A stretch of 64,000 bases of DNA from positions 1 to 64,000 of the IMG/VR virus record IMGVR_UViG_3300043409_000928. One strand, 5' to 3'. This document shows, piece by piece, positions 19,656-33,823 of the stretch. Below the pieces are notes generated by a model that saw nothing but the letters and a program-made list of their open reading frames with translations, was not told where the DNA came from and searched no databases. The number at the start of each line of letters is the position of its first letter. Position 1 is the first letter of the stretch. The position numbers and the translations under genes were made by a program.

Positions 19656-19788
19656 ACCATAGAAAAACACACTTGGCTCCCCTTACAACCTTGTTCCTGT
19701 CAATTCAGGATGAAACTGGATGCACCCAGTGGCTCCCCTTGGTTGTTTGTATCTGTCAATTCAGATTGAAAGTGTGTTTATCTATGGT
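19656..19788 (-). ncRNA. Stem-closed ncRNA candidate with internal duplication
   Basis: ACCATAGATAAACACACT...AGTGTGTTTTTCTATGGT terminal stem. Confidence 0.55.
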
Positions 19789-19858
19789 AGGGGTGCTCGG
19801 GAACGATCCGAGTTTTACTGGTTAAAAGCCAGTTACTTCACCTTAAAGTTTCACCCCC
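19785..19858 (-). tRNA. tRNA-Lys(TTT), atypical
   Basis: CTTTTAA loop; A8 instead of U8; T-loop ATCGTTC. Confidence 0.85.
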
Positions 19859-20078
19859 ATTAATTTCTCTCTTTTGCGCTTGTCGTTCTGATTTCCAGAA
19901 CACACGCTTCCAATCCTTCAAGTGTTTCCACCATTGCGGACTGCGTGTCAGAATACCCTGTTGCTTATGCGCCATAAAGAGACCCCCTATACTGATTGCA
20001 AAGATCAGTCCACGCTAGTATTTCTTTTTCATTACTCTTCATTGAATCATTCCAAGACATAATTGTCTCCTTTAAATT

Positions 20079-20153
20079 TGGTGGTAATGGTAAGAATCGA
20101 ACTTACACTTGACTGCGTATGAAGCAGGCGCACTACCGTTATGCTACATTACC
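20079..20153 (-). tRNA. tRNA-Met(CAT), elongator-type
   Basis: TTCATAC loop; G1-C72. Confidence 0.88.
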
Positions 20154-20154
20154 T

Positions 20155-20232
20155 TGGAGTACAGAGTCGGATTTGAACCGACGGCTTTACTGGTTTGCAA
20201 TCAGTTCCCTTGGGCCTCTCGGGCATCTGTAC
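20155..20232 (-). tRNA. tRNA-Cys(GCA)
   Basis: TTGCAAA loop; U73. Confidence 0.93.
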
Positions 20233-20240
20233 ATGTTGAA

Positions 20241-20460
20241 TTTGTTAAAGTAGTGCTACCACATTATAAGCACCATTCACCCGAATTAACAAGCTCGAGC
20301 GGGATTCGGTAAGTTACTTGGGATACCGGGCCAGCGTATAGACCTTTCTACCTCGGACACTACGTGCCCGGGTGGGGATCGAACCCATTTGCCTTCTACT
20401 GTTTTGGTCCTTCGAAGAAACCTAGACAGCGTGACTTTCTCTTGCTAACACTTTAACAAA
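20241..20460 (-). ncRNA. YrlA/Y-RNA-like ncRNA with permuted tRNA-like module
   Basis: Long terminal stem; T-arm > closed acceptor-like stem > D-arm order. Confidence 0.5.
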
Positions 20461-20463
20461 ACT

Positions 20464-20538
20464 TGGCGCCCTGTGATGGAATCGAACCACCATCCTGAGT
20501 TTCGAAGACTCTAATTCTATCCGTTGAACTAACAGGGC
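20464..20538 (-). tRNA. tRNA-Arg(TCG)
   Basis: CTTCGAA loop; CCA. Confidence 0.93.
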
Positions 20539-20544
20539 ATAAAC

Positions 20545-20619
20545 TGGTGGGCCAGTCTGGAATTGAACCAGAACTCAACCGATTATGAGTCGGACGCTTT
20601 ACCATTAAGCTACTGGCCC
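20545..20619 (-). tRNA. tRNA-Ile2(CAT), probable lysidine type
   Basis: CTCATAA loop; GGGCC acceptor stem resembles Ile2. Confidence 0.85.
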
Positions 20620-20623
20620 AATT

Positions 20624-20697
20624 TGGCGTACCTCCAGGGACTCGAACCCCGACGAACAGTTTTGGAGACTGTCATGCTGCCATTACATTAGAGATAC
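20624..20697 (-). tRNA. tRNA-Trp(CCA), second copy
   Basis: CTCCAAA loop; CCA. Confidence 0.92.
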
Positions 20698-20704
20698 ATA
20701 AAAA

Positions 20705-21067
20705 TTAATAATTGTCCCAGAACATCGTGTTGTTGCATTGATAATCAAAGTCGTTTTTTAACTCTTCTATATCCATGCTGTCAACTCTGTACTGGTGTTG
20801 AACCCCTGCCCATATACTAATGCGAACATAGTCTGCTGGCGCACTGGTTGGACGTGGTGTGGATGTTTTGTGTTGTATAAAACCTGTGCTGTTACCTGAC
20901 TTAAAAGAATACCCACCAGGAGTATCCCAATTCTCTAACAATGCTTGCATTTCAGCCTGAGTCATTGTGTAAGTGTGTGCATAGTTGTCAGCTACTCGAA
21001 TAGTTAGATCAACTGTGCCTTTGTCTTTGAACAGGTAAATTTTAAAAGTTTTATCAAACGCTAGCAT
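20705..21067 (-). CDS. Hypothetical protein
   Basis: AAGGA RBS; between tRNAs. Confidence 0.65.
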   Translation of the reverse strand: MLAFDKTFKIYLFKDKGTVDLTIRVADNYAHTYTMTQAEMQALLENWDTPGGYSFKSGNSTGFIQHKTSTPRPTSAPADYVRISIWAGVQHQYRVDSMDIEELKNDFDYQCNNTMFWDNY

Positions 21068-21076
21068 ATTATCCTT

Positions 21077-21168
21077 TGGCGGAAGCGGTGAGATTCGAAC
21101 TCACGGGAGGTTTAACCCTCCGCTAGTTTTCAAGACTAGTGCCATAAACCGGACTCGGCCACACTTCC
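21077..21168 (-). tRNA. tRNA-Ser(TGA)
   Basis: CTTGAAA loop; long variable arm. Confidence 0.95.
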
Positions 21169-21173
21169 TAAAT

Positions 21174-21258
21174 TGGTGGAGTATCCTGGGATCGAACCAG
21201 GCGTGCCCGAAGGCGGCGGATTTACAGTCCACTGCATCACCATTGATGCTTCTACTCC
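21174..21258 (-). tRNA. tRNA-Tyr(GTA)
   Basis: CTGTAAA loop; long variable arm. Confidence 0.93.
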
Positions 21259-21266
21259 ATGTAGAA

Positions 21267-21295
21267 ATTTTAACACACTAACACGCAAATGTCAA
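21267..21295 (-). promoter_or_regulatory. Internal sigma70 promoter upstream of tRNA-Tyr
   Basis: TTGACA-17-TAAAAT. Confidence 0.6.
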
Positions 21296-21300
21296 TGTGT

Positions 21301-21368
21301 GTATTAAAGCATACTCGGCTCGTGGCCTTGTCCCCTAAACATTCTAGTTTTGGAATATGCTTTAATAC
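21301..21368 (-). ncRNA. Stem-closed ncRNA candidate
   Basis: GTATTAAAGCATATT...AGTATGCTTTAATAC. Confidence 0.5.
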
Positions 21369-21465
21369 GATCTAATTTTTCCTCCCACAAAAGGGATTCC
21401 ATCCTAGTCGCCGCCCATTTGCCCATGTTTTAAGTGCGGGCTAGGATCTCGTTTCCTACTACACT

Positions 21466-21503
21466 AAAAGAAAAACCCCTGGAGCCTTTCGAGTCCAGGG
21501 GTT
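21466..21503 (-). terminator. Attenuator terminator ahead of tRNA cluster 1
   Basis: AACCCCTGGA-CTCGAAAGGC-TCCAGGGGTT followed by TTTCTTTT. Confidence 0.85.
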
Positions 21504-21523
21504 AAGTAAACGGTCTGATTACT

Positions 21524-21640
21524 TTATCCTGGACATGCTCCTAGAATATGACGATATGACATAAACTTAGAAACGCTGAAGCTTAGGCTCTGTTGTGAGC
21601 ACCAACTTTGTTTCGATATGGATATGGTTTTGTTCATCAT
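21524..21640 (-). CDS. Leader (attenuator) peptide 1, 38 aa
   Basis: MMNKTISISKQSWCSQQSLSFSVSKFMSYRHILGACPG; ATG 7 nt after TATAAT (leaderless); 3' end pairs with terminator arm. Confidence 0.75.
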   Translation of the reverse strand: MMNKTISISKQSWCSQQSLSFSVSKFMSYRHILGACPG

Positions 21641-21647
21641 AGTAATC

Positions 21648-21676
21648 ATTATACACTTACTTAGCCTTTCTGTCAA
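21648..21676 (-). promoter_or_regulatory. sigma70 promoter of tRNA cluster 1 leader
   Basis: TTGACA-17-TATAAT; nested TAAGTA. Confidence 0.85.
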
Positions 21677-21702
21677 CCTCTGTTTGACTTATCGGCAAAA
21701 AT

Positions 21703-21915: not shown

Positions 21916-21989
21916 AGAAATCCTTGTAAAGAACTATTATAGCACAAAAAATCAGTTTGTCAACCTGTGTTGTAAAAATACAACGGTAG

Positions 21990-22471: not shown

Positions 22472-23617
22472 CTAATTTAAATTAGGCTTTTTGTACTGCA
22501 AGTTTGTCAACGATTGACCCCGTACTTTATCAAGCATGTTGGTGAATTCTAGAAACTTTTCCGGTTGTCCAATGGTGTCTAATTTTTTTAATATATTTGC
22601 CAGTTCCATAGTAATTTTAGATAAGTTGGCGCCTTGGAGAATCTGAATCGCATTATTAATTTCAACTCTGGCTTGGGTTTTCATCTCAGCAGGCAGATTT
22701 TCAAATTTTAACGGTATTGGTGTTGTTGCCACATGCGCTTTAAACTGCAAAGATGGAAACATATCTGACAACGACTGAAAGAATTTTGATGTTGCTGTGT
22801 AGTCTAATAATCCATAGGATGTTATTGTAGAATGAATTGCTACATTTTTAAATTCTTTACAAAATAATAAAGTATTTTTTTCTACAACTGGCCAGTCCGT
22901 TCCGTATCGCACGTATTCTGCTGTTTTTCCCACTGCATCAATGCTTAAATTTAAATGTAAATTTTTAAACTGTTTTAATCTGCCAATGAAGAGAGGGTTA
23001 TATACACTACAGTTGGTAAAGATAAACAACTCAATGTCTTGCTTGCCAATGGATATCAGATAGTCCAGCACATCGTAATATTTTTTAATCAGCATTGGCT
23101 CACCACCAGTTAAAAACAGTCTATCAGTGTCCTTTAATTGTTCAAGTATTTGGTTCCAGTTACTGGTAGAAGTTTCGTAGTCTGAGTCAGAACTAATTGA
23201 AAAGAATTTTGTTAACTCTGGGTTTGCTTCAACTTCTTTTTGCAACATTGAACTAGATTCGGTGTTGCACATTCTACAACTAAAATTACACTGATTACTG
23301 ATACGCAATTCCATCCATTTGGTGCCCAAGTGGTCAGTTGACGTCAAATCAAAATTTTCACATAACTTTGCATATTTTGTTGTGTAATATTTTCTAATAC
23401 TGTGCAGGCCTTTATCTTCTTTTTGCCAACAACTATTACAAGTAGATGGACGAATACCATCTAGAAACTGTTGTTTAATTTCCCGAAGATAATTAGATTT
23501 TATATAATCGTTTGGACTAACTAAAATTTTATCTCGACTGGTACAGCAAAGAGACGCCCGGTTAGATTGATAAAAGAGAGAAAGCCAAGGGGCTGGGCAA
23601 AAGGATGATGAAATCAT
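22472..23617 (-). CDS. Radical SAM protein with N-terminal SPASM/twitch-like domain
   Basis: CPAPW..CC..CNSC; CNFSCRMC; TGGEP; TAAGTA-5nt-ATG. Confidence 0.88.
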   Translation of the reverse strand: MISSSFCPAPWLSLFYQSNRASLCCTSRDKILVSPNDYIKSNYLREIKQQFLDGIRPSTCNSCWQKEDKGLHSIRKYYTTKYAKLCENFDLTSTDHLGTKWMELRISNQCNFSCRMCNTESSSMLQKEVEANPELTKFFSISSDSDYETSTSNWNQILEQLKDTDRLFLTGGEPMLIKKYYDVLDYLISIGKQDIELFIFTNCSVYNPLFIGRLKQFKNLHLNLSIDAVGKTAEYVRYGTDWPVVEKNTLLFCKEFKNVAIHSTITSYGLLDYTATSKFFQSLSDMFPSLQFKAHVATTPIPLKFENLPAEMKTQARVEINNAIQILQGANLSKITMELANILKKLDTIGQPEKFLEFTNMLDKVRGQSLTNLQYKKPNLN

Positions 23618-23647
23618 ACCAATACTTATCGTCGAAGTTACGAGCAA

Positions 23648-24286
23648 TCAGCAGTAGCCTAGGTGTTCCAATCTAGAGACCAAATTGGTCCAGGCAATTT
23701 GTCGTTTAACTTCTGCTGTGATTTGAATCCTGCTGACAGGGCAGTTGGGACTTTGTGCCCTGTGTGCAATTTCAGTTCTGTTCCAACATGCACCTGGATC
23801 TAGTACCGTAAATGCTGGCGTTGTACCCCAATCATCTATTAGAGATTTAAAACTGTATGCTGTTCGACCCACTCCATTTCGAAGTTCAGTGAACTCACGC
23901 TCGACAATTCGATCACTGTCAATCCCGTCATCCCACCAGTCCAGCGTCACTGGGCTTAGTCCTTGTATTGGAATATTAAAACGAGCCACCATGGCCGTGC
24001 CACGTTCAAATGCATCTATGTGAGCCACCTTGGGACATTGCTTAGGCTGTGAAATAAAACAAGCAAATCTTTTAAATTCTAATTTTAATTCATCAAAATG
24101 TGCCAGTACTGCATCACGCTGTGGCCAAGATTTAAACAATTCTTGTGGTACGTCAACTCGGTCAAATGCCCCTTTGATTAATTTTAATGCTGGATATAGG
24201 TTTGGTGTTAAATTCTCCATGCCCCATGCACAGTCTGAATCAGACGGATTAAATTTAGGCATTGGGATATGATAGTGTTTATGCAT
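23648..24286 (-). CDS. 2OG-Fe(II)-like DSBH protein
   Basis: AHID ... RTEIAH ... R; resembles 14751..15425. Confidence 0.6.
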   Translation of the reverse strand: MHKHYHIPMPKFNPSDSDCAWGMENLTPNLYPALKLIKGAFDRVDVPQELFKSWPQRDAVLAHFDELKLEFKRFACFISQPKQCPKVAHIDAFERGTAMVARFNIPIQGLSPVTLDWWDDGIDSDRIVEREFTELRNGVGRTAYSFKSLIDDWGTTPAFTVLDPGACWNRTEIAHRAQSPNCPVSRIQITAEVKRQIAWTNLVSRLEHLGYC

Positions 24287-24351
24287 TATATTACTTATTG
24301 GGAAAATTCTGGTGTAAAATTCAGATAATTAACTTATACAAGGAGTTTACG

Positions 24352-25254
24352 ATGAAGTTAAAAATATTGCTGTCCAGTTTATTAATCAGTGGAAGTGCCA
24401 TTGCTGGTCCAGTAGAATTTACGGTTACACATGCACCGGGTGGACCAAGTGATACCACCACACGCTTACTGGCCAAAACAGTGGGCGGTAATGAATTTGT
24501 AGTTGTTAATAGGCCAGGTGCTGGTGGTGCCATTGCTGTCAAGCAATTGTTGGACGAAAAGACCGTTTTGGTAGCAACTATGAGCCAAATCTATGTTACC
24601 AATCCCGTGCTATTTCCCAACCTAGGTTACGACCCAGACACTGATTTAGAACTAATTGGCGTTGTGGCAAGTATGCCCAGTGTGCTGGTATGCAATTCTA
24701 ATAAGAATATAAATTCCATCGGCGACTTGGCCAAAAGCCGATCACTTAACTTTGGTGTAGCAGGGTATGGAAGCAGTGAACATTTGGCAACTGAAGTGCT
24801 GTTTAAAAAATTAAAAGCCAATCACCTGGCTGTTCCTTATAGCAAGGGTGGTACTGCCGCAGTACAAGACATGTTGGGTGGAAACATTGATTGTATGTTT
24901 GCAAACTATCCGGTGGTAAGTGAGTGGGTTGGTAACAGTCGATTGAAGTTTATCATGAGCAGTCATGACTTGGGTCTTAAAGTTCCAACTTGGAAGTCTA
25001 GCTTTGCTGAGCCATTCCCATTTGAAAGCTACCTAGGATTAGTTGTTGCTCGTTCAATGAACGAAGCTGACAAGGAAGTGCTGAAGGCAAAGTTTACTCA
25101 AGCGTTTGGCAATAAAGAACTTGCAACTGCGTTGTCTAGGGCGGGCCTATTCCCTGTGCTTGCAATGGATAAGAAGTCTGTTGAAGCCGGGCTGTATAAC
25201 AATACAAAATTAAGAACGTTCATTTTACAGAACAATATTAAAATATCCAACTAA
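24352..25254 (+). CDS. Tripartite tricarboxylate transporter substrate-binding protein (Bug/TctC)
   Basis: PGGPSD..R, VVVNRPGAGG, VPYSKGG, DMLGG. Confidence 0.9.
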   Translation: MKLKILLSSLLISGSAIAGPVEFTVTHAPGGPSDTTTRLLAKTVGGNEFVVVNRPGAGGAIAVKQLLDEKTVLVATMSQIYVTNPVLFPNLGYDPDTDLELIGVVASMPSVLVCNSNKNINSIGDLAKSRSLNFGVAGYGSSEHLATEVLFKKLKANHLAVPYSKGGTAAVQDMLGGNIDCMFANYPVVSEWVGNSRLKFIMSSHDLGLKVPTWKSSFAEPFPFESYLGLVVARSMNEADKEVLKAKFTQAFGNKELATALSRAGLFPVLAMDKKSVEAGLYNNTKLRTFILQNNIKISN

Positions 25255-26460
25255 TTATCGTATCCACAAACAGTCGGACTGTAAGTTTGCAATAGGTCCT
25301 AGGCTGTAGGTATGTGAAACTACAACAAGCCCGTCAACGTCCTTGGCTGGATCTTGTTGTTTTTTAATGAAAGGTGTTAGGTTATTTTTAATATAATTAA
25401 TGCCCTCTAACCATACCTGGCCAGCTCTAGTGTCTTTGTATAGATCTAGAAACCATCCATCAAATTCACTGCTCCAATCATACACAGCTTTCTTTGCCTG
25501 GAACCAGTTGGGATTCCATGTGGTGTATAACAGTCCACGAAGTAGTGGATCATGATGAAGTCTATACACTTCAGTGGTAACATATGAAGTGTCCCAAATT
25601 TTTTGATTTTCAGGAAATGCTTCTAACCATCGTTTAATTACGTGCCCTTGCTTGATTATAAGCTCTGGCATGTCTGGAGTCCAGTAAAAGAACTCAACAG
25701 TACTATTTGGATACTCTTTTAGGTGTTCTGCTACAGTAATCATATTGGTAGTACGATCGCTGAATGTCATCAACAGTTCTCCGCGGTGGAGTTGCGTTCT
25801 TGGCTTTTCAATACCAACTACAATAGCAATCTTATGATCCTTGTCAAACTTTTTTCGAATCTCAGAAAAGTGTAGAAAGTTAAAGCGGGTCATACCTGCT
25901 GGGTTTAAACCTTCACGCTTGTTTAGTACCCAACTGGCATCACCTGCGGTTTCGAGTTCTGCAAATAGTGCATCACTACAGTCTGTAATTGTAATTTTTG
26001 TTTTAGGCATCCAGGTTGAAATTTCTTTTAACCTGGGAATAGTATTCAAATTGTGTTCTGACTCGGGTGCATTGTATGCATCTGTATTGGAAGGATCAAT
26101 TATCATTGCAGATGAACTGGCCTTGGTCATTGTGTTGGTAATAATCTCATCAATGTGCAGTCCTTGCCGATAAAAGCTCATTAAGATGTTATGGCTATCG
26201 GCACCGCCTGAATAACTTAAAATGAGGTAATCGTATTGCTCGCGCAACTGTCGAGCACGTTGGTCATACAACTGGTCTAATGACTGCTCGGGCTCTTTTT
26301 TCCAATCGTACTTGTTGAACTCGTCATTGTTAAAAACCCAAGTAACTGGCTTCTTTACTTCCATTGCATATATACATGCACGAATTTTTGAATCAAACTC
26401 TAGGTCACCTACAATATAGTATCCAAGTTTTTTATTAATATATGGGTTGTGTATTCTCAT
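25255..26460 (-). CDS. N-type ATP pyrophosphatase (PP-loop) protein
   Basis: LSYSGGADS. Confidence 0.7.
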   Translation of the reverse strand: MRIHNPYINKKLGYYIVGDLEFDSKIRACIYAMEVKKPVTWVFNNDEFNKYDWKKEPEQSLDQLYDQRARQLREQYDYLILSYSGGADSHNILMSFYRQGLHIDEIITNTMTKASSSAMIIDPSNTDAYNAPESEHNLNTIPRLKEISTWMPKTKITITDCSDALFAELETAGDASWVLNKREGLNPAGMTRFNFLHFSEIRKKFDKDHKIAIVVGIEKPRTQLHRGELLMTFSDRTTNMITVAEHLKEYPNSTVEFFYWTPDMPELIIKQGHVIKRWLEAFPENQKIWDTSYVTTEVYRLHHDPLLRGLLYTTWNPNWFQAKKAVYDWSSEFDGWFLDLYKDTRAGQVWLEGINYIKNNLTPFIKKQQDPAKDVDGLVVVSHTYSLGPIANLQSDCLWIR

Positions 26461-27383
26461 AGTTGCGTGAACCGTTTTACTTTGTCAGAGGACCAATTGC
26501 TTAGATGTGTTATTAGTTCATCACGTGGAACAAACACACATTTATTTTTATAGTTATGACGAAGTCGAGTGTCAGTTGGATTCATTATAAAGTCTACTTT
26601 CTCAGAGCTAACATACTTTGGAAAAATTTCTAATTCCTGACCCCAATACATTCCGTATATGATTGGTTTTACGTAGTATTCCCAACTGAAGATCAATGGA
26701 GGTGGCTCTCCTGTTTCTTTGTCTACTAGTCCGTTTCCTTTAATGTATTCCAATGCATTGATATAGCCGGTAACTACTGGATCACTTAGGTATGCCAAAG
26801 CAAAGTTATTAAATGGCGCCCTACGGTCAATACAAACAATCTTTCCCGACCGCACAACCTGCTTTAATGCTCGTTGGCTCGCAACTTCAATTGCAGTCCA
26901 TGACTCCATACAGTATGCTTTACCTTGCCTGAAGACAAAATCAAAACTTTCAATTCCTTGGCAAAAATCTCGATCTTTGGGTAATTGAGCCAGGAACTTT
27001 TTCATCATGTGATGTTCGGCTGGAATGCCCGTGGATATTGCATTTGCTTCTATTTCTTCACGAATTGCAAATGGGTCTATTTCAACAATTGTACACTCAA
27101 ATCCGTATTTCTTTTCAAGTATCTTAATGTTATTGTATTCAAAATCATTGTAACCTGGATGATACATGAATGCACACTCGTATGGCAAACCCAGCGTGTG
27201 AAATGTGTGCAGTAGCACTTGGCTGTCTAGGCCACTGGTAAGACTTATTAAAACTTTGCTTTGTGCTTCATTAGCAAGTCTAGTACATGACTTTTCCATT
27301 TCCTGCCGGACTGTGCCAATTGGTTCCGAGCAGGCTGTATATTCTACATAAAATTTGTCGTTGTCATCTAGACCATATATCAT
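26457..27383 (-). CDS. N-type ATP pyrophosphatase (PP-loop) protein
   Basis: SLTSGLDSQ; TAAGTA-5nt-ATG. Confidence 0.65.
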   Translation of the reverse strand: MIYGLDDNDKFYVEYTACSEPIGTVRQEMEKSCTRLANEAQSKVLISLTSGLDSQVLLHTFHTLGLPYECAFMYHPGYNDFEYNNIKILEKKYGFECTIVEIDPFAIREEIEANAISTGIPAEHHMMKKFLAQLPKDRDFCQGIESFDFVFRQGKAYCMESWTAIEVASQRALKQVVRSGKIVCIDRRAPFNNFALAYLSDPVVTGYINALEYIKGNGLVDKETGEPPPLIFSWEYYVKPIIYGMYWGQELEIFPKYVSSEKVDFIMNPTDTRLRHNYKNKCVFVPRDELITHLSNWSSDKVKRFTQL

Positions 27384-27391
27384 GCACTTAC

Positions 27392-27571
27392 TTACCAACT
27401 GCCGTTGTCAACAACTATCCTGACTGATAGCACGAGTATCTGTACTACAACTTCTCGACGACCGGGGCACGGCCATTCAGCCTTGGTTGGATCAATGCAG
27501 TAAGAAATACGCCAATGAAATGGATTACAAATTAATGTAACCCATATGCCACTGTATCTAAACCAATCCAT
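27392..27571 (-). CDS. Hypothetical protein
   Basis: NPFHWR motif; coupled. Confidence 0.55.
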   Translation of the reverse strand: MDWFRYSGIWVTLICNPFHWRISYCIDPTKAEWPCPGRREVVVQILVLSVRIVVDNGSW

Positions 27572-28089
27572 TAAATATTCCCTTCGTGCTTGGGCATTAT
27601 AAAACCCCACTCATTTGTGGTGCCATGCACATCGTAGGACTTTTCTTCACTGTCATAAGTCCAACCCAGCTCTCGCATCATTTTGTGCTTGACCAATAAG
27701 TTAGGAATACGAAAACGTTCGCAATCTGCAAAGCCCATCATGACACCAACTTCTACTACTGCGCCGCTACGGCAAATGCCTGCATGGCAGTGAACCACAA
27801 CATTCATACGATTTTCCCAAGCATGTTTCAACAAGCGAACCAGCTCAACAGCCTGTGCGTCTGTGATAGCAAACTCACTCATGTCAATAGTCTTACCATC
27901 ACCGGTATTGGTCATGCCATCTTCTTCAATATCCAAAAATGTAAATTGGTGCACTTCTTTGAACTCATGACGGGGTGTAGGAAATGCCATGTCGTGATCC
28001 GAAATTTGAATCAACATGCTGTTGGCACCGCAATCGTGGTGGCGCCCAGCGGCTACATTTTCTAAAGGTATGTTTTCAATCCAGGGCAT
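27571..28089 (-). CDS. Cys-based (tyrosine/dual-specificity-like) phosphatase
   Basis: VHCHAGICRS (CX5R). Confidence 0.85.
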   Translation of the reverse strand: MPWIENIPLENVAAGRHHDCGANSMLIQISDHDMAFPTPRHEFKEVHQFTFLDIEEDGMTNTGDGKTIDMSEFAITDAQAVELVRLLKHAWENRMNVVVHCHAGICRSGAVVEVGVMMGFADCERFRIPNLLVKHKMMRELGWTYDSEEKSYDVHGTTNEWGFIMPKHEGNI

Positions 28090-28099
28090 GTTCTTCTCC

Positions 28100-29581
28100 T
28101 TATAACGACATTAATAGTTGTATGTACTCGGTCAGCCGCTTGTCTTTTGCTGTGACCAGTTCAAAACGAGTCCATTTATTTTTATTTTCTTTTAAAAATC
28201 TATCTTCACTGAATCCAAGTTGAAGTAATTGCAGTATTGACCATGATCCGTGATAGGCATTAGTGGTCAGATTTATCTCCGTTATTGTTTCTTTAAGAAA
28301 TTTGCTAGTTTCTTTAAAACTCCAATAATCGTTATGCCAATTTCCACGATCTTGTTTGATAGGAAAAAAGTAACCGTATTTTTCTTTTTCTTTTTCAAAC
28401 TCACTTGGATTTCGAATCAATGATGTTGTATCGTCGGTAGCCATCATACCCAGGCAATGCCAGGAAATATTGTACAGGTTATTATCATTGAACCAGTGTG
28501 CTGTGCTCTTGATACTTTCTCTAGTGTCACCGGGTAGTCCAATGATAAAACTTAGTGTCTGGTGTATCTTGCCTTTCCAGATATTATGATAAAGTTCTGG
28601 TATATACTCTCGGGCTCGTTTCCCACTCCAACCTTTGCCTATACTGGCCGATGCTTGTTCTCCTAGTGTTTCAATACCATGAAACGTGCTTATCATTCCA
28701 GTTTCTTGCAGTATGTGAGGAACGTCGTCAAATCGCTCCAGTAGGTCGGCTCGTATATAAGATGTAAACTTAATTTTGAATGGTAAACTAGTAATCATGT
28801 CATGCCAAGCTTTCATCTTGTATTCTGTATCGTTGAAAGTGTCGCATATAACGTAGTACAGTTGTGTACCAAAGTTTTCATAGTTACTCAACATCTCTTC
28901 TTTGACCAAGTCAAAGCTTCTAAGGTAGTCTAGCTTTCCTCGACCTAATAATAGGTGATTACAAAATTTACACTTGAAGATACATCCTCGACTTATTTCA
29001 ACTGGTAGTGCTTCGCCTGGTAATATTGCATCTTGTTTGACAAATCTAAAATTGTCAGTTTCAATGTTAAAGTTTTCATGTATTGGTACTGAGTAAACTT
29101 TATATGTTTGACTTGTAATTCTTGTGTTCTCTAATGTATAAGCAGGCTCATCACCGTGTCCTGAGATATGCTTCAGGACATCTACAAATATATCTTCACC
29201 ATATTTTGAAACAACTGAATGAATATTTTGTATTGTTGAGAGTGTCAATCCTGAAAGACCGTAGCCACCAAATATTAATTTTAGATTTGGATATTTTGCT
29301 GTAATGTGATTCAAAGCCAGTGTAAAACTTGCTGTAAATTGCATCTGACCAACGGTAGGTGTAAGGAATGTTGTACTGACACCCAGTACTAATGTGTCAT
29401 TGGAAACAAATTTTTCCAGTGCTGCCACAAGTTGATCATAAGAAAAATAAACCACATGATCAATAACTTGTGCTGTGTATCCGGCTTGCCTTACTGAGTG
29501 AGCAATTTTATATGCGCCCAGAGTACGATACATTGTAATGTTACTAACGTCTGGTCCAGTGTTAAGAATAACAACATCCAT
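28100..29581 (-). CDS. B12-binding radical SAM protein (class B methyltransferase-like)
   Basis: N-terminal B12 domain (GVSTTF, IFGG, GE); SRGCIFKCKFC; GIET; IIGLPGDT. Confidence 0.85.
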   Translation of the reverse strand: MDVVILNTGPDVSNITMYRTLGAYKIAHSVRQAGYTAQVIDHVVYFSYDQLVAALEKFVSNDTLVLGVSTTFLTPTVGQMQFTASFTLALNHITAKYPNLKLIFGGYGLSGLTLSTIQNIHSVVSKYGEDIFVDVLKHISGHGDEPAYTLENTRITSQTYKVYSVPIHENFNIETDNFRFVKQDAILPGEALPVEISRGCIFKCKFCNHLLLGRGKLDYLRSFDLVKEEMLSNYENFGTQLYYVICDTFNDTEYKMKAWHDMITSLPFKIKFTSYIRADLLERFDDVPHILQETGMISTFHGIETLGEQASASIGKGWSGKRAREYIPELYHNIWKGKIHQTLSFIIGLPGDTRESIKSTAHWFNDNNLYNISWHCLGMMATDDTTSLIRNPSEFEKEKEKYGYFFPIKQDRGNWHNDYWSFKETSKFLKETITEINLTTNAYHGSWSILQLLQLGFSEDRFLKENKNKWTRFELVTAKDKRLTEYIQLLMSL

Positions 29582-29627
29582 TTACTTTTATTCCTTGAAA
29601 ATTTAGTGGCTGTGTTACTTATTGTAA

Positions 29628-29655
29628 TGGCTCCAGTGGCTGGGATCGAACTCAG
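29628..29655 (-). pseudogene. tRNA 3'-end remnant
   Basis: CTGAGTTCGATCCCAGCCACTGGAGCCA: T-arm, acceptor strand and CCA only. Confidence 0.65.
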
Positions 29656-29668
29656 GCTGAGAAGTATA

Positions 29669-29744
29669 TGGCTGGCAAACCTGGGCTCGAACCAGGGACA
29701 TTTCGGTTAACAGCCGAACGCTCTACCAACTGAGCTATATGCCA
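29669..29744 (-). tRNA. tRNA-Asn(GTT)
   Basis: CTGTTAA loop; G73. Confidence 0.95.
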
Positions 29745-29760
29745 ATAATAAATTTAATTC

Positions 29761-29890
29761 ACTTTATAGGTGCTCTCTGTGACGCTTGAATTCACGGTAG
29801 CCCTGCTCTTCCTGGCACCTCTTGACCTGCTCGAGACTAGTCAAGTGCAGTGTTGTTCCAGTGTAGCTACTCAGAAAGCACGTATAAAGT
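29761..29890 (-). ncRNA. Stem-closed ncRNA candidate
   Basis: ACTTTATACGTGCTTTCTG...CAGAGAGCACCTATAAAGT. Confidence 0.5.
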
Positions 29891-30088
29891 GTCCGGCTAC
29901 TCACACCACATGAGCCCCGGACTGAGCGGTTACTCTGTCCATAACATTTTTCTTATGGGATGGCGTTATACCACACCCCAGGCAGTTTCCAGTATCCCAT
30001 ATAGTGGGACTGTGAGGTCAGGTCCTAGTGTACCCCCTGTTCTCTCGTTTCAGGGACGCTGTTTTATAACGCAAAACAGTAAACCGGG
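29890..30088 (-). ncRNA. Structured ncRNA candidate, copy A
   Basis: Shares ordered motifs with 32545-32745. Confidence 0.6.
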
Positions 30089-30322
30089 TTATTTAATTTT
30101 ACGCATATAGTTTTTTACATTTATTTCGCCTGAATTAAATTCAAGCAATGCAGTTACCGGTGCGTTAAATTGTTCTGTCTTTCCATCATTCCTATGCTGG
30201 CTTGCTAGTTCTCTTGCTCGAGCAGATGCCATAAGAATCAGATTAAACTTGTTTCCGCCTGCATTTTCAATGCATACCTCCACATCAATTTCTGTGCCGC
30301 GACTTAGTGATTTAGAATGCAT
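30089..30322 (-). CDS. rpoZ: RNA polymerase omega subunit homolog
   Basis: NKFNLILMASARAREL...PVTALLEF..GEI. Confidence 0.8.
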   Translation of the reverse strand: MHSKSLSRGTEIDVEVCIENAGGNKFNLILMASARARELASQHRNDGKTEQFNAPVTALLEFNSGEINVKNYMRKIK

Positions 30323-30348
30323 TGTTTGCCTTTGTTGTTAACTACTCA

Positions 30349-30422
30349 TGGAGCGGGATAAGAGAATCGAACTCTTGACCGAAGATTGGAAATCTGCTGT
30401 TTTACCATTAAACTAATCCCGC
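30349..30422 (-). tRNA. tRNA-Gly(TCC)
   Basis: TTTCCAA loop; U73. Confidence 0.95.
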
Positions 30423-30955
30423 CAATGCACACCACCTACCTGTGTCAAACGTAATGCTATGCTGACTCTGGTATCAGTTACGCCTGATACGTTATGTAGA
30501 ATATTCGAGTGAAGCATCACCCATTTTCTTAACGGCACTATAGTCGAATAACATTTTTCGAGGTCGTCAAACACAGTTGTATTTGCTATGCTAGCTTTTC
30601 TAATTAAAGGAAATCCCTTTTCTATGAACCAATTTGTCTGAACATCTATGCCCCCTTGATCCAGGATATAAAAAATAGTAGTTTCACCTGCCGCGTCTGT
30701 GTGAGGAGCTTTAGTTCCGTATGGGGGGAGAATTTCTTGAATAGAACTGTCACTTAACTGGTAACCATCCAGTTGAGGCACAATATTTGCTGTTATCCAA
30801 TCTTTCATTTTTGTTGACTGCCTGTATTTCATAAAACACTGTTGTCTAGCATAGTATTGAGAAGACAGTGAAATACAGGAATATGCGTCTTGTTCTAGAT
30901 CATATGGTAAGGGTGGATAATCTAATTCTTTATAAAAATCTTCAGGACTAAACAT
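30413..30955 (-). CDS. 2OG-Fe(II)-like DSBH protein
   Basis: PHTD ... ILHNV ... R; stop codon lies inside tRNA-Gly. Confidence 0.6.
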   Translation of the reverse strand: MFSPEDFYKELDYPPLPYDLEQDAYSCISLSSQYYARQQCFMKYRQSTKMKDWITANIVPQLDGYQLSDSSIQEILPPYGTKAPHTDAAGETTIFYILDQGGIDVQTNWFIEKGFPLIRKASIANTTVFDDLEKCYSTIVPLRKWVMLHSNILHNVSGVTDTRVSIALRLTQVGGVHWRD

Positions 30956-30977
30956 TACTTTTTCTCCGTTTTAAACT

Positions 30978-31054
30978 TGGTCGGAGTACTAGGATTCGAA
31001 CCTAGGACCTCATCGTCCCAAACGATGCGAACTACCGGGCTGTTCTACACTCCG
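30978..31054 (-). tRNA. tRNA-Pro(TGG)
   Basis: TTTGGGA loop. Confidence 0.95.
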
Positions 31055-31061
31055 ACATAAC

Positions 31062-31136
31062 TGGTTGCAGGGGATGGATTCGAACCACCGATCTTCAGCT
31101 TATGAGACTGACGAGTTGCCACTTCTCTACCCCGCG
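31062..31136 (-). tRNA. tRNA-Met(CAT), initiator-like
   Basis: C1:A72 mismatch; CTCATAA. Confidence 0.9.
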
Positions 31137-31155
31137 ATAACTTACTAACTTTAAC

Positions 31156-31231
31156 TGGTGCCGCTTGTCGGATTCGAACTGACCACCTGCCGCTTACAAG
31201 GCGGCTGCTCTACCAAATGAGCTAAAGCGGC
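31156..31231 (-). tRNA. tRNA-Thr(TGT)
   Basis: CTTGTAA loop. Confidence 0.95.
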
Positions 31232-31260
31232 GAAACTTTTATAACCTTACTTATGTGTGC

Positions 31261-31335
31261 TGGTGCGCGGTGAGAGTTTCGAACTCCCGACCCTCTCGGT
31301 GTAAACGAGACGCTCTACCACTGAGCTAACCGCGC
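31261..31335 (-). tRNA. tRNA-Val(TAC)
   Basis: TTTACAC loop. Confidence 0.95.
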
Positions 31336-31345
31336 CGTTGATTTA

Positions 31346-31786
31346 TTAATCACCTAGATATTCGTAATTGGTTGACTCAGTGTTTTCTCTAAAAACAATA
31401 GCACCATTTTTTGTATGAAACCTTTTGGCCATCTCTGTTTTAGGACTCAGTGTAACAAATCTTTTAATATGTGTCTTGTGCTGTTGTATATGCTTCACTG
31501 CATCAAATATCAACTGTTTACCAGCGCCTGGCTTGTAACTCCAGATTGTATAAAATACTGCTGTGTCTGGTTCCTCTGAACTTTCAAACAATTGATCTTC
31601 GCTGGTGGGAATTCCAATTTGGTAACTCACACAAGTAATGGCTCGTGCTATATCATTTTCATCTCTTAAAACAAAAATGTCTTTGTTATCGCCCATGCGC
31701 TCTACAGTAGGAATATGCGGGCGTACTGGATCGTCCTTGAGATATTCTGCAAGTTTTTCACTTAGATTTTGAAGAAGGTATAACAT
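31346..31786 (-). CDS. Conserved phage protein, GNAT-like fold
   Basis: DDPVRP, AVFYTIWS..GAG, FVTLSP. Confidence 0.7.
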   Translation of the reverse strand: MLYLLQNLSEKLAEYLKDDPVRPHIPTVERMGDNKDIFVLRDENDIARAITCVSYQIGIPTSEDQLFESSEEPDTAVFYTIWSYKPGAGKQLIFDAVKHIQQHKTHIKRFVTLSPKTEMAKRFHTKNGAIVFRENTESTNYEYLGD

Positions 31787-31961
31787 CAGAGTTACTTAGT
31801 CGTTTATAATTGTTATTGCTATCATCTTTGATAACTGCTTCGGCTTGGTTCTCACCTTCAGCCTTTTTCTTTTTTCCAAACGCCAATTCCCAATTGCTTG
31901 TAAATGTATCTTCATCTACACTCTTTGGTCTTGGCGCGGATCCTTTGCCAGCTTCTTGCAT
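31758..31961 (-). CDS. Small conserved phage protein
   Basis: GKGSAPRP...NWELAFG. Confidence 0.6.
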   Translation of the reverse strand: MQEAGKGSAPRPKSVDEDTFTSNWELAFGKKKKAEGENQAEAVIKDDSNNNYKRLSNSDVIPSSKSK

Positions 31962-31982
31962 ACTAACTTTCCTTTAAAATAG

Positions 31983-32058
31983 TGGTGGAGGTGACAAGGA
32001 TCGAACTTGCGACATCCAGCTTGCAAAGCTGGCGCTCTCCCAACTGAGCTACACCCCC
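31983..32058 (-). tRNA. tRNA-Ala(TGC)
   Basis: G3-U70; TTTGCAA. Confidence 0.95.
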
Positions 32059-32076
32059 AAAAATTTTATGATTTGC

Positions 32077-32164
32077 ACCATAGAAAAACACACTCAAGTC
32101 CGCGGCACGGAAGGCACTATACCCGCGATGGCTTTTGACCAGGCCTAGTGTGTTTATCTATAGT
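32077..32164 (-). ncRNA. Stem-closed ncRNA candidate
   Basis: ACTATAGATAAACACACT...AGTGTGTTTTTCTATGGT, near-identical stem to 19656-19788. Confidence 0.55.
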
Positions 32165-32165
32165 T

Positions 32166-32273
32166 AGCATATTGAAACACACTATACAACAGGTTTAGGT
32201 CTGCTTCTGTATCCTGCTACGGCCGAGTATGAAGTTATCTCTGGACCTATGCCGTAATGTGTTTTAATATGCT
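32166..32273 (-). ncRNA. Stem-closed ncRNA candidate
   Basis: AGCATATTAAAACACATT...AGTGTGTTTCAATATGCT. Confidence 0.55.
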
Positions 32274-32460
32274 CTGCGAACCCCGGTGGTAATTGTAGTG
32301 CATCCTCTCCCGGGTTACCCCAGTACGACCTCACCTTCCACCCACTTCCCGGCAGGTTCCGTTAACGCATTGCCAGCGGCCTTTTGGTTCGAAGACTACC
32401 ACCCGTGGTTGTCACACCACTTCTCATCCTGCGGGTCACAGTATCCGACGACACTCGGAA
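32272..32460 (-). ncRNA. GC-rich structured ncRNA candidate
   Basis: CTGTGACCC/GGGTTCGCAG and GGTGGTAGT/ATTACCACC long-range stems. Confidence 0.5.
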
Positions 32461-32464
32461 CGTC

Positions 32465-32540
32465 TGGTTGCGGGGCTTGGATTTGAACCAAGGATGGCAA
32501 TGGCTTATGAGACCACGCTGGTGACCAGGCCCTCCCCGCG
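32465..32540 (-). tRNA. tRNA-Met(CAT), initiator-like, aberrant D arm
   Basis: C1:A72; CTCATAA; CCA. Confidence 0.8.
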
Positions 32541-32544
32541 ATTA

Positions 32545-32745
32545 GGATTAAGCTACTGGTTTCCACACCAGCCCTTAAATTGAGCAGTTACTCTGTCCAT
32601 CTCATTTATTCAAAGTCTGTGTGCAGTTGAGATTCTGCCTATCAGAGTCTGCGAGGGTAGTTTCCAGCCTCACGCTTACGGTTTTCTGCCACCGGATCTC
32701 TATCGCTAATCAAACGCTATTTTAACGAAAATAGTAACGGGATAG
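32545..32745 (-). ncRNA. Structured ncRNA candidate, copy B
   Basis: Shares ordered motifs with 29890-30088. Confidence 0.6.
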
Positions 32746-32870
32746 ATGGGCTCAGTTACAAACTGATTTAATGCTCCCTGCTCGGCGTTTTGACTTGCAT
32801 CCTTTTCAGGCTGACCTTCAAGGTCCATTTAATGCGTCCTGCTTTGCGTTCTGGAACCACCCTAAACTCT

Positions 32871-32899
32871 ATTATAGCACCAATCAACGTGAGTGTCAA
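32871..32899 (-). promoter_or_regulatory. sigma70 promoter (internal)
   Basis: TTGACA-17-TATAAT. Confidence 0.8.
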
Positions 32900-32913
32900 T
32901 TGGTGCCAAATCT

Positions 32914-32988
32914 TGGCGACTCGTGGGAGAATCGAACTCCCGTAAGCGGATAGACAATCCGCAGTAATAACCTCTATACGAACGAGCC
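32914..32988 (-). tRNA. tRNA-Asp(GTC)
   Basis: TTGTCTA loop; G73. Confidence 0.92.
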
Positions 32989-32995
32989 TAATTTC

Positions 32996-33080
32996 TGGTG
33001 CGACTGGCCGGAATCGAACCGGCACGCCCTTCAGCGAGAGATTTTAAGTCTCTTGTGTCTACCGATTTCACCACAGTCGC
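32996..33080 (-). tRNA. tRNA-Leu(TAA)
   Basis: CTTAAAA loop; long variable arm. Confidence 0.95.
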
Positions 33081-33083
33081 AAT

Positions 33084-33300
33084 ACCATATGTAAAATTAC
33101 AAAGGAACTCCACTTACCTTGCAGGACCGTCTCCTGCTACTTCTGCTTCGTCATTACGCTCTAGTAAATCCTACCGTGCCATTTGGTGATGTTGCCATCC
33201 CTCAGCTTTCATATACACTACATTGAGCCAGCCCGTCAGCTGGTTATACTCAATACAGGTACCTAGCAGTACTAGTAACCTTTATAACTTTACATATGGT
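33084..33300 (-). ncRNA. Stem-closed ncRNA candidate (~215 nt)
   Basis: ACCATATGTAAAGTTATAAAGG...CCTTTGTAATTTTACATATGGT. Confidence 0.55.
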
Positions 33301-33817: not shown

Positions 33818-33823
33818 AGTACC

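What the first reader, a model, noticed from the sequence alone, without database searches (positions are those of the whole stretch)
19656..33300. Family of RNAs closed by a conserved terminal helix with variable interiors
SEEN: four elements (19656-19788, 21301-21368, 32077-32164, 32166-32273) have 15-18 bp terminal stems with the core AAACACACT/AAACACATT/AAGCATATT paired to AGTGTGTTT/AGTATGCTT, but unrelated interiors of about 38-97 nt. Two stems 12 kb apart are nearly identical. Three more elements (20241, 29761, 33084) have long but different closing stems. INFERENCE: a shared processing or protein-binding handle carrying interchangeable cargo (decoys, sponges or guides), co-transcribed with tRNAs; reminiscent of the stable RNAs of unknown function in the T4 tRNA cluster.
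Basis: partly seen in the sequence, partly recalled or inferred. Interest (0 to 1): 0.65.

Follow-up and report, generated by a model that had tools for sequence, protein, structure and literature searches.

The report
Helix-clamped RNAs between phage tRNAs
Between the tRNA genes of this large freshwater phage sit small RNAs that share one 18-base-pair closing helix, hold over a hundred different interiors across related phages and nearly always follow the lysine tRNA; their function is unknown, but the design looks like a plug-in slot for accessory RNAs.

Summary
Elements A (19656-19788), B (21301-21368), D (32077-32164) and C (32166-32273), all on the minus strand, are members of one family. 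Each has an 8-bp outer helix, usually a 1x1 mismatch, a 9-bp inner helix (AAACACAYU/AGUGUGUUU) and then an unrelated interior ("cargo").

The window is the start of a 285-kb phage record. In IMG/VR I found 247 such elements in 109 contigs: 183 unique sequences and about 110 cargo types of 9-207 nt.

- One cargo occurs with different clamps, and one clamp with many cargos.
- The outer helix covaries.
- 127 elements begin on the ACCA end of the upstream tRNA. 57 end on the first 2-3 bases of the next tRNA.
- 83 of 91 tRNA-Lys(UUU) genes are followed by one, against 0 of 58 tRNA-Lys(CUU).

Best reading: these are inter-tRNA spacer RNAs cut out by tRNA end-processing. A constant clamp closes them and insulates an exchangeable cargo.

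There is no Rfam match. There is no Ro or RNase III gene in this record or in four complete relatives. Bacterial genomes gave almost nothing. The clamp's partner and the cargo functions are unknown. I found no prior description.

The parts
19656..19788 (-). Element A: canonical clamp (8 bp, U.U mismatch, 9 bp) with a 97-nt cargo made of two tandem modules. Its first four bases are the ACCA end of tRNA-Lys(UUU).
   Evidence: Fold. Internal direct repeat D3. The same cargo occurs in L031, L043, L063, L067, L072, L106 and L109.
19785..19858 (-). tRNA-Lys(UUU). Its discriminator and CCA form positions 1-4 of clamp A.
   Evidence: 83 of 91 tRNA-Lys(UUU) genes in clamp-bearing contigs are followed by a clamp.
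21301..21368 (-). Element B: variant clamp. A 6-bp outer helix runs straight into an inner helix AAGCAUAUU/AGUAUGCUU, which differs from the canonical one by two compensated changes. The cargo is 36 nt. It lies upstream of a class II tRNA-Tyr(GUA), between a terminator-like hairpin and a predicted promoter.
   Evidence: The same clamp encloses an A-type cargo in L106:6249-6386, also upstream of tRNA-Tyr.
32166..32273 (-). Element C: clamp with a different outer helix (AGCAUAUU/AAUAUGCU), an A.C mismatch, the canonical inner helix and a 72-nt cargo.
   Evidence: The same cargo occurs with three outer-helix variants in L010, L051 and L077.
32077..32164 (-). Element D: canonical clamp with a 52-nt cargo, one base after C and 18 nt before tRNA-Ala.
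   Evidence: An identical cargo follows tRNA-Lys(UUU) in L051. A 114-nt lake metatranscriptome contig lies on 32079-32162.
33081..33303 (-). Distant relative: a 22-25 bp closing helix that starts on the ACCA of tRNA-Glu(UUC) and ends 2 nt before tRNA-Leu(UAA). The cargo is 173 nt. The outer helix ACCAUAUG/CAUAUGGU is family-like; the inner helix is different.
   Evidence: Inverted repeat I2. (99% identical in L010, L016, L105).
29760..29891 (-). Closing helix of 9 bp, a C.C mismatch and 10 bp, with its own sequence. The cargo is homologous to L051:4372-4499, which sits in a canonical clamp. It ends 15 nt before tRNA-Asn.
20233..20466 (-). Structured RNA of about 230 nt between tRNA-Arg(UCG) and tRNA-Cys, with its own closing helix and internal covarying hairpins.
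   Evidence: alignment A1, 8 loci.
32871..32899 (-). Consensus sigma-70 promoter (12 of 12 matches, TG before the -10) of the unit that holds C, D and tRNA-Ala.
21267..21295 (-). Predicted promoter (11 of 12 matches) just downstream of B. It overlaps a small hairpin with a canonical-like inner helix.
   Evidence: sequence read.

Best explanation
The elements are a family of small RNAs encoded as spacers inside the phage's polycistronic tRNA units.

Anatomy: each consists of a constant clamp and a variable cargo. The clamp is an 18-bp helix formed by the element's two ends: 8 bp, usually one mismatch, then 9 bp of nearly fixed sequence. The cargo is 9 to about 200 nt and folds on its own.

Biogenesis (inferred): the clamp's first four bases are the discriminator and CCA of the upstream tRNA. 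Its last two or three bases are often the first bases of the downstream tRNA. The enzymes that trim tRNA ends would therefore release a hairpin-closed RNA with a helix of about 14 bp and almost flush ends. These are RNase P on the 3' side and the 3'-end pathway of the upstream tRNA on the 5' side.

Role of the clamp (inferred): it does two things. It insulates cargo folding from tRNA folding, so any RNA module can be inserted without spoiling tRNA processing. It also protects the released RNA from exonucleases.

Exchange (inferred): the near-identical arms also give short homologies by which cargos are swapped between sites and between phages.

Cargos (inferred): they are accessory RNAs. Their turnover and their position behind tRNA-Lys(UUU), a tRNA that defence nucleases target in other systems, point to phage-host conflict.

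Shown: the anatomy, the conservation, the covariation, the position relative to tRNA ends and the modularity.
For: Family size:
- 247 elements in 109 viral contigs, 183 unique, about 110 cargo clusters.
- An empty clamp with a 9-nt loop exists (L143:2148-2192).

Helix is selected as RNA on the tRNA strand:
- With no pairing filter, positions 7 and 8 pair in 47 of 47 unique elements, using U-A/G-C/A-U and A-U/G-C/C-G. The shuffle maxima are 41 and 43.
- Position 9 is unpaired in 43 of 47.
- G.U outnumbers A.C 56 to 6 outside position 9.

Modularity:
- The D cargo is identical in the window (after C) and in L051 (after tRNA-Lys).
- The C cargo has three different outer helices.
- The B-type clamp carries an A-type cargo in L106.
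- 40 cargo clusters follow a single tRNA-Lys lineage, often between unchanged flanks.

Ends:
- 127 of 247 overlap the upstream tRNA by exactly 4 nt.
- 57 overlap the downstream tRNA by 1-5 nt (55 of them by 2-3).
- 113 have a tRNA within -5 to +10 nt.
- 75 are flanked by tRNAs on both sides.

Link to one tRNA:
- Lys(UUU) 83 of 91, Glu(UUC) 18 of 80, Gln(UUG) 8 of 76, Lys(CUU) 0 of 58, Pro 0 of 90.
- The link held when contigs were found by the tRNA alone: 63 of 92, plus 6 variant or empty clamps.

Transcription:
- Consensus promoters lie upstream on the same strand.
- Lake metatranscriptome contigs lie on D, on C and across tRNA-Ala-D-C.

Context from the literature:
- PARIS cleaves host tRNA-Lys and phage T5's own tRNA-Lys rescues infection (PMC11464382).
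- Spacers of E. coli tRNA precursors act as sRNA sponges (papers found).
Against: - No RNA ends were mapped. The metatranscriptome data are contigs and cannot show termini. Depth over C and D is no higher than over neighbouring ORFs.
- The CCA of the upstream tRNA is paired inside the clamp. This should hinder, not help, ordinary 3' trimming, and the nuclease that frees it is unknown.
- The inner helix is far more conserved in sequence than pairing alone requires. That hints at a specific partner, which this model does not name.
- B lies between a terminator-like hairpin and a predicted promoter, so it may be poorly transcribed.
- The counts come from related metagenomic contigs and are not independent events. 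My census required the core motif, so divergent clamps are under-counted.
- There is no evidence at all for what any cargo does.
Confidence: 0.6

Rival explanations
1. The clamp is only a processing or insulating hairpin of the tRNA-Lys(UUU) trailer. The cargos are neutral insertions in its loop with no function of their own.
For: - Empty clamps exist.
- The cargos share no motif.
- Every lineage of tRNA-Lys(UUU) keeps the clamp whatever the cargo.
Against: - Individual cargos are kept almost unchanged in different contexts. The D cargo is identical in L051, where the neighbouring 230-nt RNA is only 85% identical. Whole-element column identity is 96% for D and 94% for C.
- Neighbouring proteins in the loci are mostly 25-80% identical.
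- Some cargo hairpins show compensatory changes.
- All cargo representatives fold into compact structures inside the clamp.
Confidence: 0.2
2. The clamp is a sequence-specific handle for a dedicated RNA-binding protein, giving a Y-RNA-like ribonucleoprotein that tethers different cargos to one effector.
For: - The inner helix is nearly invariant and a mismatch sits at a fixed place. This is what a protein site in a helix often looks like.
- Y RNAs have the same logic: terminal stem as handle, variable interior, some tRNA-like (PMC4201824).
- Four of 34 cargo representatives in the first census carry T-loop-like GGTTCGA.
Against: - No Ro/TROVE homolog in this record or in four complete clamp-bearing genomes.
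- The clamp lacks the GNCGAA motif of bacterial Y RNAs.
- The YrlA model gives only a 20.6-bit hit, and that hit lies on real tRNAs.
- No candidate partner gene was found; ORFs inside the arrays are not shared among the loci.
Confidence: 0.15
3. The clamps are RNase III sites, like the leader-trailer stems of rRNA operons or the T7 early sites. Host RNase III cuts both arms and frees the tRNA 3' end and the cargo hairpin.
For: - The helices are 18-25 bp long and often hold one internal mismatch.
- Other closing stems in the window differ in sequence but have similar length.
- A staggered cut after ACCA would leave a correct tRNA end (inference).
Against: - RNase III needs no such sequence conservation.
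- No phage RNase III gene was found, and host RNase III cannot be tested here.
- The overlap with the downstream tRNA's first bases fits RNase P better.
Confidence: 0.2
4. The elements are DNA-level mobile cassettes: MITE-like terminal inverted repeats or integron attC-like sites moved by a recombinase.
For: - The arms are inverted repeats.
- The same element is found at different sites, elements occur in tandem, and cargo is replaced between fixed flanks.
Against: - Empty sites keep both arms, so the arms are not part of the moving unit.
- There are no target-site duplications at A or D (read).
- Differences between the arms are biased toward G.U on the transcribed strand.
- The arms overlap functional tRNA ends.
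- The arms lack the attC core consensus.
- Recombinase genes were not searched for.
Confidence: 0.07

Closest known systems
Stable non-tRNA RNAs of the phage T4 tRNA cluster (species 1 and 2); from my own knowledge, not checked here
   Same: Small structured RNAs encoded among phage tRNA genes, co-transcribed with them and released by tRNA-processing enzymes. Their function is unknown.
   Different: Here there is one shared closing helix with over 100 interchangeable interiors, a fixed junction with the tRNA's ACCA, and a near-obligate link to tRNA-Lys(UUU). No sequence relation was tested.
Spacer-derived sRNAs of bacterial tRNA precursors (3' external transcribed spacer of glyW-cysT-leuZ; internal spacers of met tRNA operons)
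   Same: Functional RNAs cut out of tRNA polycistrons, with biogenesis coupled to tRNA maturation.
   Different: Those are single-stranded Hfq-dependent sponges defined by complementarity to sRNAs. These are helix-clamped and structured, and show no detectable complementarity to the phage genome.
Y RNAs / bacterial YrlA with Ro60 (Rsr)
   Same: The two ends pair into a long stem that serves as the constant part. The interior is variable and sometimes tRNA-like. Some phages encode them near tRNAs (PMC4201824, PMC12135203).
   Different: No Ro gene, no GNCGAA motif, no match to the YrlA model. The clamp is fused to tRNA ends.
tRNA-linked hairpins of murid herpesvirus 68 (TMERs) and engineered tRNA-guide arrays; from my own knowledge
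   Same: A tRNA directly followed by stem-loops that tRNA-processing nucleases release.
   Different: Those are a eukaryotic virus or man-made, with microRNA-type hairpins and no shared clamp with variable cargo.
Promoter-stem-loop (PeSL) repeats of T4-type phages and integron attC sites; from my own knowledge
   Same: Short conserved repeats flank exchangeable modules and make shuffling easy.
   Different: Those flank protein genes and act at the DNA level. Here the unit is a non-coding RNA and the repeat is selected as an RNA helix.

Membership tests
Y RNA / YrlA (Ro60-bound RNAs) | A Ro60/Rsr (TROVE) gene in the same genome, usually adjacent | tested here: not met
   Bxz1 gp220 is a true Ro (E about 1e-99 to solved Ro structures). 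It finds nothing in the 285-kb record or in four 99-100% complete clamp-bearing genomes.
Y RNA / YrlA (Ro60-bound RNAs) | Conserved GNCGAA-type motif or bulged helix in the terminal stem | tested here: not met
   The motif is as given in PMC4201824. The clamp consensus read has no such motif.
Y RNA / YrlA (Ro60-bound RNAs) | Match to the Rfam covariance models | tested here: not met
   The only YrlA hit is 20.6 bits (gathering score 69) and lies on 19217-19296, over real tRNAs. No Y_RNA hit at E up to 5.
Y RNA / YrlA (Ro60-bound RNAs) | tRNA-like domain in the interior | tested here: inconclusive
   T-loop-like GGTTCGA occurs in 4 of 34 cargo representatives, at the edge of the shuffle range. 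Most cargos have none.
Any described RNA family (Rfam 15) | Score at or above the family's gathering threshold | tested here: not met
   Only tRNA and tmRNA families pass in the window. Nothing lies on the elements at E up to 5.
tRNA-precursor spacer RNAs (ETS/ITS-derived) | Lies inside a tRNA polycistron, bounded by mature tRNA ends | tested here: met
   127 of 247 overlap the upstream tRNA's ACCA. 113 have a downstream tRNA within -5 to +10 nt. 75 are flanked on both sides. Same strand, promoters upstream.
tRNA-precursor spacer RNAs (ETS/ITS-derived) | Accumulates as a discrete stable RNA | tested here: inconclusive
   Short metatranscriptome contigs lie on D and on C, but contigs show no ends and the depth is modest.
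tRNA-precursor spacer RNAs (ETS/ITS-derived) | Acts by base pairing with other RNAs (sponge) | tested here: inconclusive
   No complementarity of the A, C or D cargos to the phage genome above shuffled controls. Host RNAs are unknown.
RNase III processing stems | Double-stranded helix of about two turns | tested here: met
   Helices of 18-25 bp.
RNase III processing stems | Cleavage by RNase III | not testable with these tools
   No end data. No phage RNase III gene.
Intrinsic terminators | Short G+C-rich hairpin with a small loop followed by a U run | tested here: not met
   The terminator scan lists none of the clamps on the minus strand. The clamps are A+U-rich with interiors of 9-207 nt.
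MITE / terminal-inverted-repeat transposon | The repeats move with the element (empty sites lack them) and leave target-site duplications | tested here: not met
   Empty clamps keep both arms. No duplications flank A or D.
Integron attC site | R/L core sites with the GTTRRRY consensus and an integron integrase | tested here: not met
   The arms end in ACCA and UGGU and lack the core consensus. An integrase was not searched for.

The most novel reading that the evidence does not exclude
The clamp behind tRNA-Lys(UUU) is a docking and expression platform for a fast-turning repertoire of small structured RNAs.
- It would be an RNA counterpart of the protein-coding anti-defence islands of phages.
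- Each cargo would be an inhibitor, decoy or aptamer for a different host factor.
- The conserved arms would serve as both RNA clamp and cassette-exchange sites.
- The attachment to the tRNAs that anticodon nucleases attack (Lys, Glu, Gln with a 5'-U anticodon) would be functional, not historical.
Probability: 0.25. Interest if true: 0.9.

Novelty: new variant of a known kind. Interest (0 to 1): 0.75.

Why it matters
Phage tRNA arrays are now read as counter-defence tools, but the non-tRNA RNAs inside them are almost unstudied.

This family gives a simple, searchable signature: one helix, fused to tRNA ends. It marks over a hundred distinct conserved small RNAs in large freshwater phages. If the cargos act on host factors, that is a large untapped set of natural RNA effectors.

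The clamp is also a natural solution for inserting arbitrary RNA modules into tRNA operons without disturbing processing. That is of practical interest for expressing stable RNAs.

The near-obligate pairing with tRNA-Lys(UUU) is a concrete, testable clue to function.

Tried and rejected
- **Y-RNA/Ro idea:** rejected. From memory, part of the 29761 cargo resembles the 3' stem strand of a vertebrate Y RNA. The homologous cargo in L051 changes those bases while keeping a local hairpin, so I treat it as coincidence. I did not search with those letters.
- **Phage-encoded RNase III, Rnl1, Rnl2:** none found. The Rnl1 model rang in no control genome, so that blank says nothing.
- **Guides against phage RNAs:** longest complementarity is 13 nt, within the shuffle range.
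- **Shared motif among cargos:** none above shuffles.
- **Terminator reading:** rejected.
- **B as a chance look-alike:** I first thought so, since it had no BLAST homolog and sits upstream of a promoter. L106 reversed this.
- **Bacterial genomes:** one hit only, a 1.5-kb contig binned to a Candidatus Planktophila MAG. It is probably phage DNA and is not enough to name a host.
- **GenBank phages:** only tRNA-level similarity.
- **ORFs inside the arrays as candidate partners:** none is shared widely among the loci.
- **Reads:** It returned contigs only, so ends, strand and abundance of the small RNAs could not be read.
- **Not attempted:** I built no covariance model. The census used regular expressions and therefore misses clamps with more than one change in the 7-nt core.

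Full report
**Setting.** The window is the first 64 kb of a 285,304-bp IMG/VR virus record (41.5% G+C, linear, CheckV 86%).
- It carries ribonucleotide reductase and a DnaB-type helicase.
- It has 29 ARAGORN tRNAs and a permuted tmRNA, all on the minus strand.
- The tRNAs form two clusters, 16.8-21.3 kb and 29.7-33.7 kb, separated by radical-SAM and related genes.
- Perfect sigma-70 consensus promoters on the minus strand head the tRNA units.
- GenBank phages show only tRNA-level similarity.

- On the minus strand, A, B, D and C each fold with the claimed terminal helix in the minimum-free-energy structure (z = -5.3, -4.8, -3.3, -4.2).
- A, D and C share one layout: an 8-bp outer helix, a single mismatch (U.U or A.C) and a 9-bp inner helix AAACACAYU/AGUGUGUUU.
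- A and D differ at one arm position. Their 15-nt arm motif occurs nowhere else in the genome.

**It is a large family.**
- A scan of IMG/VR for the arm motif found it paired in inverted orientation in many contigs. All of these are tRNA-rich, with the tRNAs on one strand.
- A second scan asked only for the anticodon arm of one tRNA-Lys(UUU) lineage, so it is independent of the clamp. It brought 109 contigs.
- Together they give 247 elements in 109 contigs: 183 unique sequences, about 110 cargo clusters, cargo length 9-207 nt with a median of 56.
- A scan of one genome for each of 185,579 prokaryote species found a single hit, on a 1.5-kb MAG contig.
- Rfam has nothing.
- Three literature searches gave no description of anything similar.

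**The helix is selected as an RNA helix on the tRNA strand.**
- I took elements by the inner cores alone, with no pairing demanded at positions 5-9. Positions 7 and 8 pair in 47 of 47 unique sequences with three pair types each, above every shuffle. Position 9 is unpaired in 43 of 47.
- In the whole set, outer positions 1, 2, 3, 7 and 8 each show three to five standard pair types. That census did demand pairing.
- G.U exceeds A.C by 56 to 6 outside position 9 in the first census.
- Across all clamps the mismatch is present in a little over half. It is near-constant only behind tRNA-Lys.
- The inner helix is almost invariant in sequence, which pairing alone does not explain.

**Clamp and cargo are separable.**
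- The D cargo is identical in the window, where it follows C, and in L051, where it follows tRNA-Lys. It occurs with two clamp variants.
- The C cargo has three different outer helices with full compensation.
- The A cargo occurs as one module, as two modules, or with an enlarged middle hairpin.
- In L106 the A cargo sits inside the B-type clamp upstream of tRNA-Tyr, just where B sits in the window. This makes B a true member.
- The cargo of the 29761 element sits in a canonical clamp in L051.
- Behind one tRNA-Lys lineage there are 40 cargo clusters, several between the same flanks.
- Clamps with almost no cargo exist.
- The cargos share no motif. Each is well kept: whole-element column identity is 94-96% for the C and D alignments. 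Nearby proteins in the loci are mostly 25-80% identical.

**Position relative to tRNAs.**
- 127 of 247 elements start exactly on the discriminator and CCA of an upstream tRNA.
- 57 end on the first bases of the next tRNA, mostly tRNA-Met(CAU) and tRNA-His. In 55 of them the overlap is 2-3 bases.
- 113 have a tRNA within -5 to +10 nt, and 75 are flanked on both sides.
- In the window, A overlaps tRNA-Lys(UUU). The 33084 element runs from the ACCA of tRNA-Glu to 2 nt before tRNA-Leu.
- The choice of upstream tRNA is far from random: Lys(UUU) 83 of 91, Glu(UUC) 18 of 80, Gln(UUG) 8 of 76, Leu(UAG) 7 of 55, Leu(UAA) 4 of 55, Lys(CUU) 0 of 58, Pro 0 of 90.
- At least five quite different tRNA-Lys(UUU) sequences all carry the clamp.
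- With contigs found by the tRNA alone, 63 of 92 have the canonical clamp and 6 more have variant or empty ones.
- These counts come from related contigs and are not independent events.

**Expression.**
- Twelve lake or freshwater metatranscriptomes hold parts of the region.
- Laid on 29550-33850, they give a 114-nt contig on D (32079-32162), a 151-nt contig on C (32163-32271) and a 1,770-nt contig across tRNA-Ala, D and C.
- These are contigs of relatives. They show presence in RNA libraries, not ends or strand, and DNA carry-over cannot be excluded.
- Depth over C and D is ordinary. Two neighbouring stretches are very deep (see the notes below).

**How it most likely works.**
- The overlap with tRNA ends on both sides makes excision by tRNA end-processing the simplest route. 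RNase P would cut at the next tRNA's first base. An endonuclease or trimming would act at the upstream CCA. The product is a hairpin with a helix of about 14 bp and nearly flush ends, which should resist exonucleases.
- The clamp also keeps cargo folding apart from tRNA folding. This would explain why so many unrelated cargos are tolerated at one place.
- The near-identical arms offer homology for swapping cargos.
- All of this is inference from anatomy.
- What frees a CCA that is paired in the clamp is open. Host RNase III is one candidate; no phage RNase III exists.
- The conserved inner helix and fixed mismatch suggest a specific partner. It is not Ro.
- Cargo functions are unknown. They are not antisense to the phage's own genome.
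- tRNA-Lys is the target of PARIS and is supplied by T5 as a resistant copy (PMC11464382). Phage tRNAs in general evade anticodon nucleases (PMC10264068). That makes a role in phage-host conflict a reasonable guess, not a result.

**Comparison with known systems.**
- In working principle the family is closest to spacer-derived RNAs of tRNA precursors and to the stable RNAs of the T4 tRNA cluster.
- In design, a constant stem with a variable interior, it is closest to Y RNAs. It fails every tested membership criterion for Y RNAs.
- It also fails the tested criteria for terminators, MITEs and attC sites.

**Verdict.** I rate it a new variant of a known kind: non-tRNA RNAs of phage tRNA operons. 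It has three features I have not seen described:
- one shared clamp;
- more than a hundred exchangeable cargos;
- a near-obligate junction with tRNA-Lys(UUU).

Noticed in passing
window 32541-32870 (-), especially 32574-32717: An RNA of about 330 nt starts at the consensus promoter at 32899 and ends at an initiator-like tRNA. The stretch 32574-32717 reaches summed contig depths of 8,055 and 3,011 in two lake metatranscriptomes, against 0-10 over nearby ORFs. A 105-nt contig with one mismatch lies on 32603-32707. It is conserved in 15 loci and has no Rfam match. Identity unknown.
   Followed up: partly
window 32274-32465 (-): A G+C-rich structured stretch of 192 nt between the initiator-like tRNA and element C. 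It is conserved in 17 loci and deep in one metatranscriptome (2,212). No Rfam match.
   Followed up: partly
window 29929-29940 and 32587-32598 (-): The motif GGACAGAGUAAC, followed by a hairpin whose stem differs between the two copies while staying paired, occurs in two separate non-coding stretches. It may be a shared RNA module.
   Followed up: no
window 20233-20466 (-): A 230-nt RNA between tRNA-Arg(UCG) and tRNA-Cys. It is conserved in at least 10 loci at 76-85% identity, with several covarying hairpins and a T-loop-like GGGUUCGA. Not in Rfam.
   Followed up: partly
window 19423-19520 (-): tRNA-His is enclosed by a 21-bp helix: its acceptor stem is extended by about 12 bp of leader-trailer pairing. 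It looks like a clamp with a tRNA as cargo, and the CCA does not seem to be encoded.
   Followed up: no
window 19507-19655 (-): A 149-nt conserved non-coding stretch after element A, present in 4 loci. There it lies next to canonical clamps, on both sides in L106, L030 and L111. It has a T-arm-like hairpin. ARAGORN does not call it as a tRNA.
   Followed up: no
window 32465-32540 (-): A tRNA-Met(CAU)-like gene with the C1xA72 acceptor end of initiator tRNA but odd D and anticodon arms. ARAGORN calls it; Rfam's tRNA model does not.
   Followed up: no
window 21177-21258 (-): A class II tRNA-Tyr(GUA) with a long variable arm. ARAGORN misses it and Rfam finds it at 33.6 bits.
   Followed up: no
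window 21262-21300 (-): A small hairpin with a canonical-like inner helix (ACACACAUU/AGUGUGUU) overlaps the predicted promoter just downstream of B. It is either a decayed clamp or a chance promoter match.
   Followed up: no
window 22472-29581 (-): Between the two tRNA clusters lie a twitch-domain radical SAM protein, a B12-binding radical SAM protein, and a protein with an SGLDS PP-loop-like motif and a weak PAPS-reductase match. They are possible tRNA or nucleoside-modifying enzymes.
   Followed up: partly
window 35103-35588 (-) and 30089-30322 (-): A 161-aa P-loop protein matches the kinase domain of polynucleotide kinase-phosphatase (E = 8e-9). A 77-aa ORF inside the tRNA array gives a weak, sub-threshold match to RNA polymerase omega (E = 0.007).
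   Followed up: partly
window 43002-43421 (-): A phage-encoded permuted (two-piece) tmRNA with tag ANDSQFALAA. The best Rfam model is the betaproteobacterial one.
   Followed up: no
L116 (1,478-bp contig binned to a Candidatus Planktophila MAG): The only prokaryote-genome hit for the clamp. It is probably a phage fragment binned with a freshwater actinobacterium, and is only a weak host hint.
   Followed up: no
L126, L149, L162, L181 (downstream of tRNA-Lys(UUU)): Other clamp classes of 21-23 bp also start on ACCA but have different sequences. One has an inner helix AAAUACAUU/GGUGUAUUU close to the canonical one. The census by core motif therefore under-counts the superfamily.
   Followed up: partly
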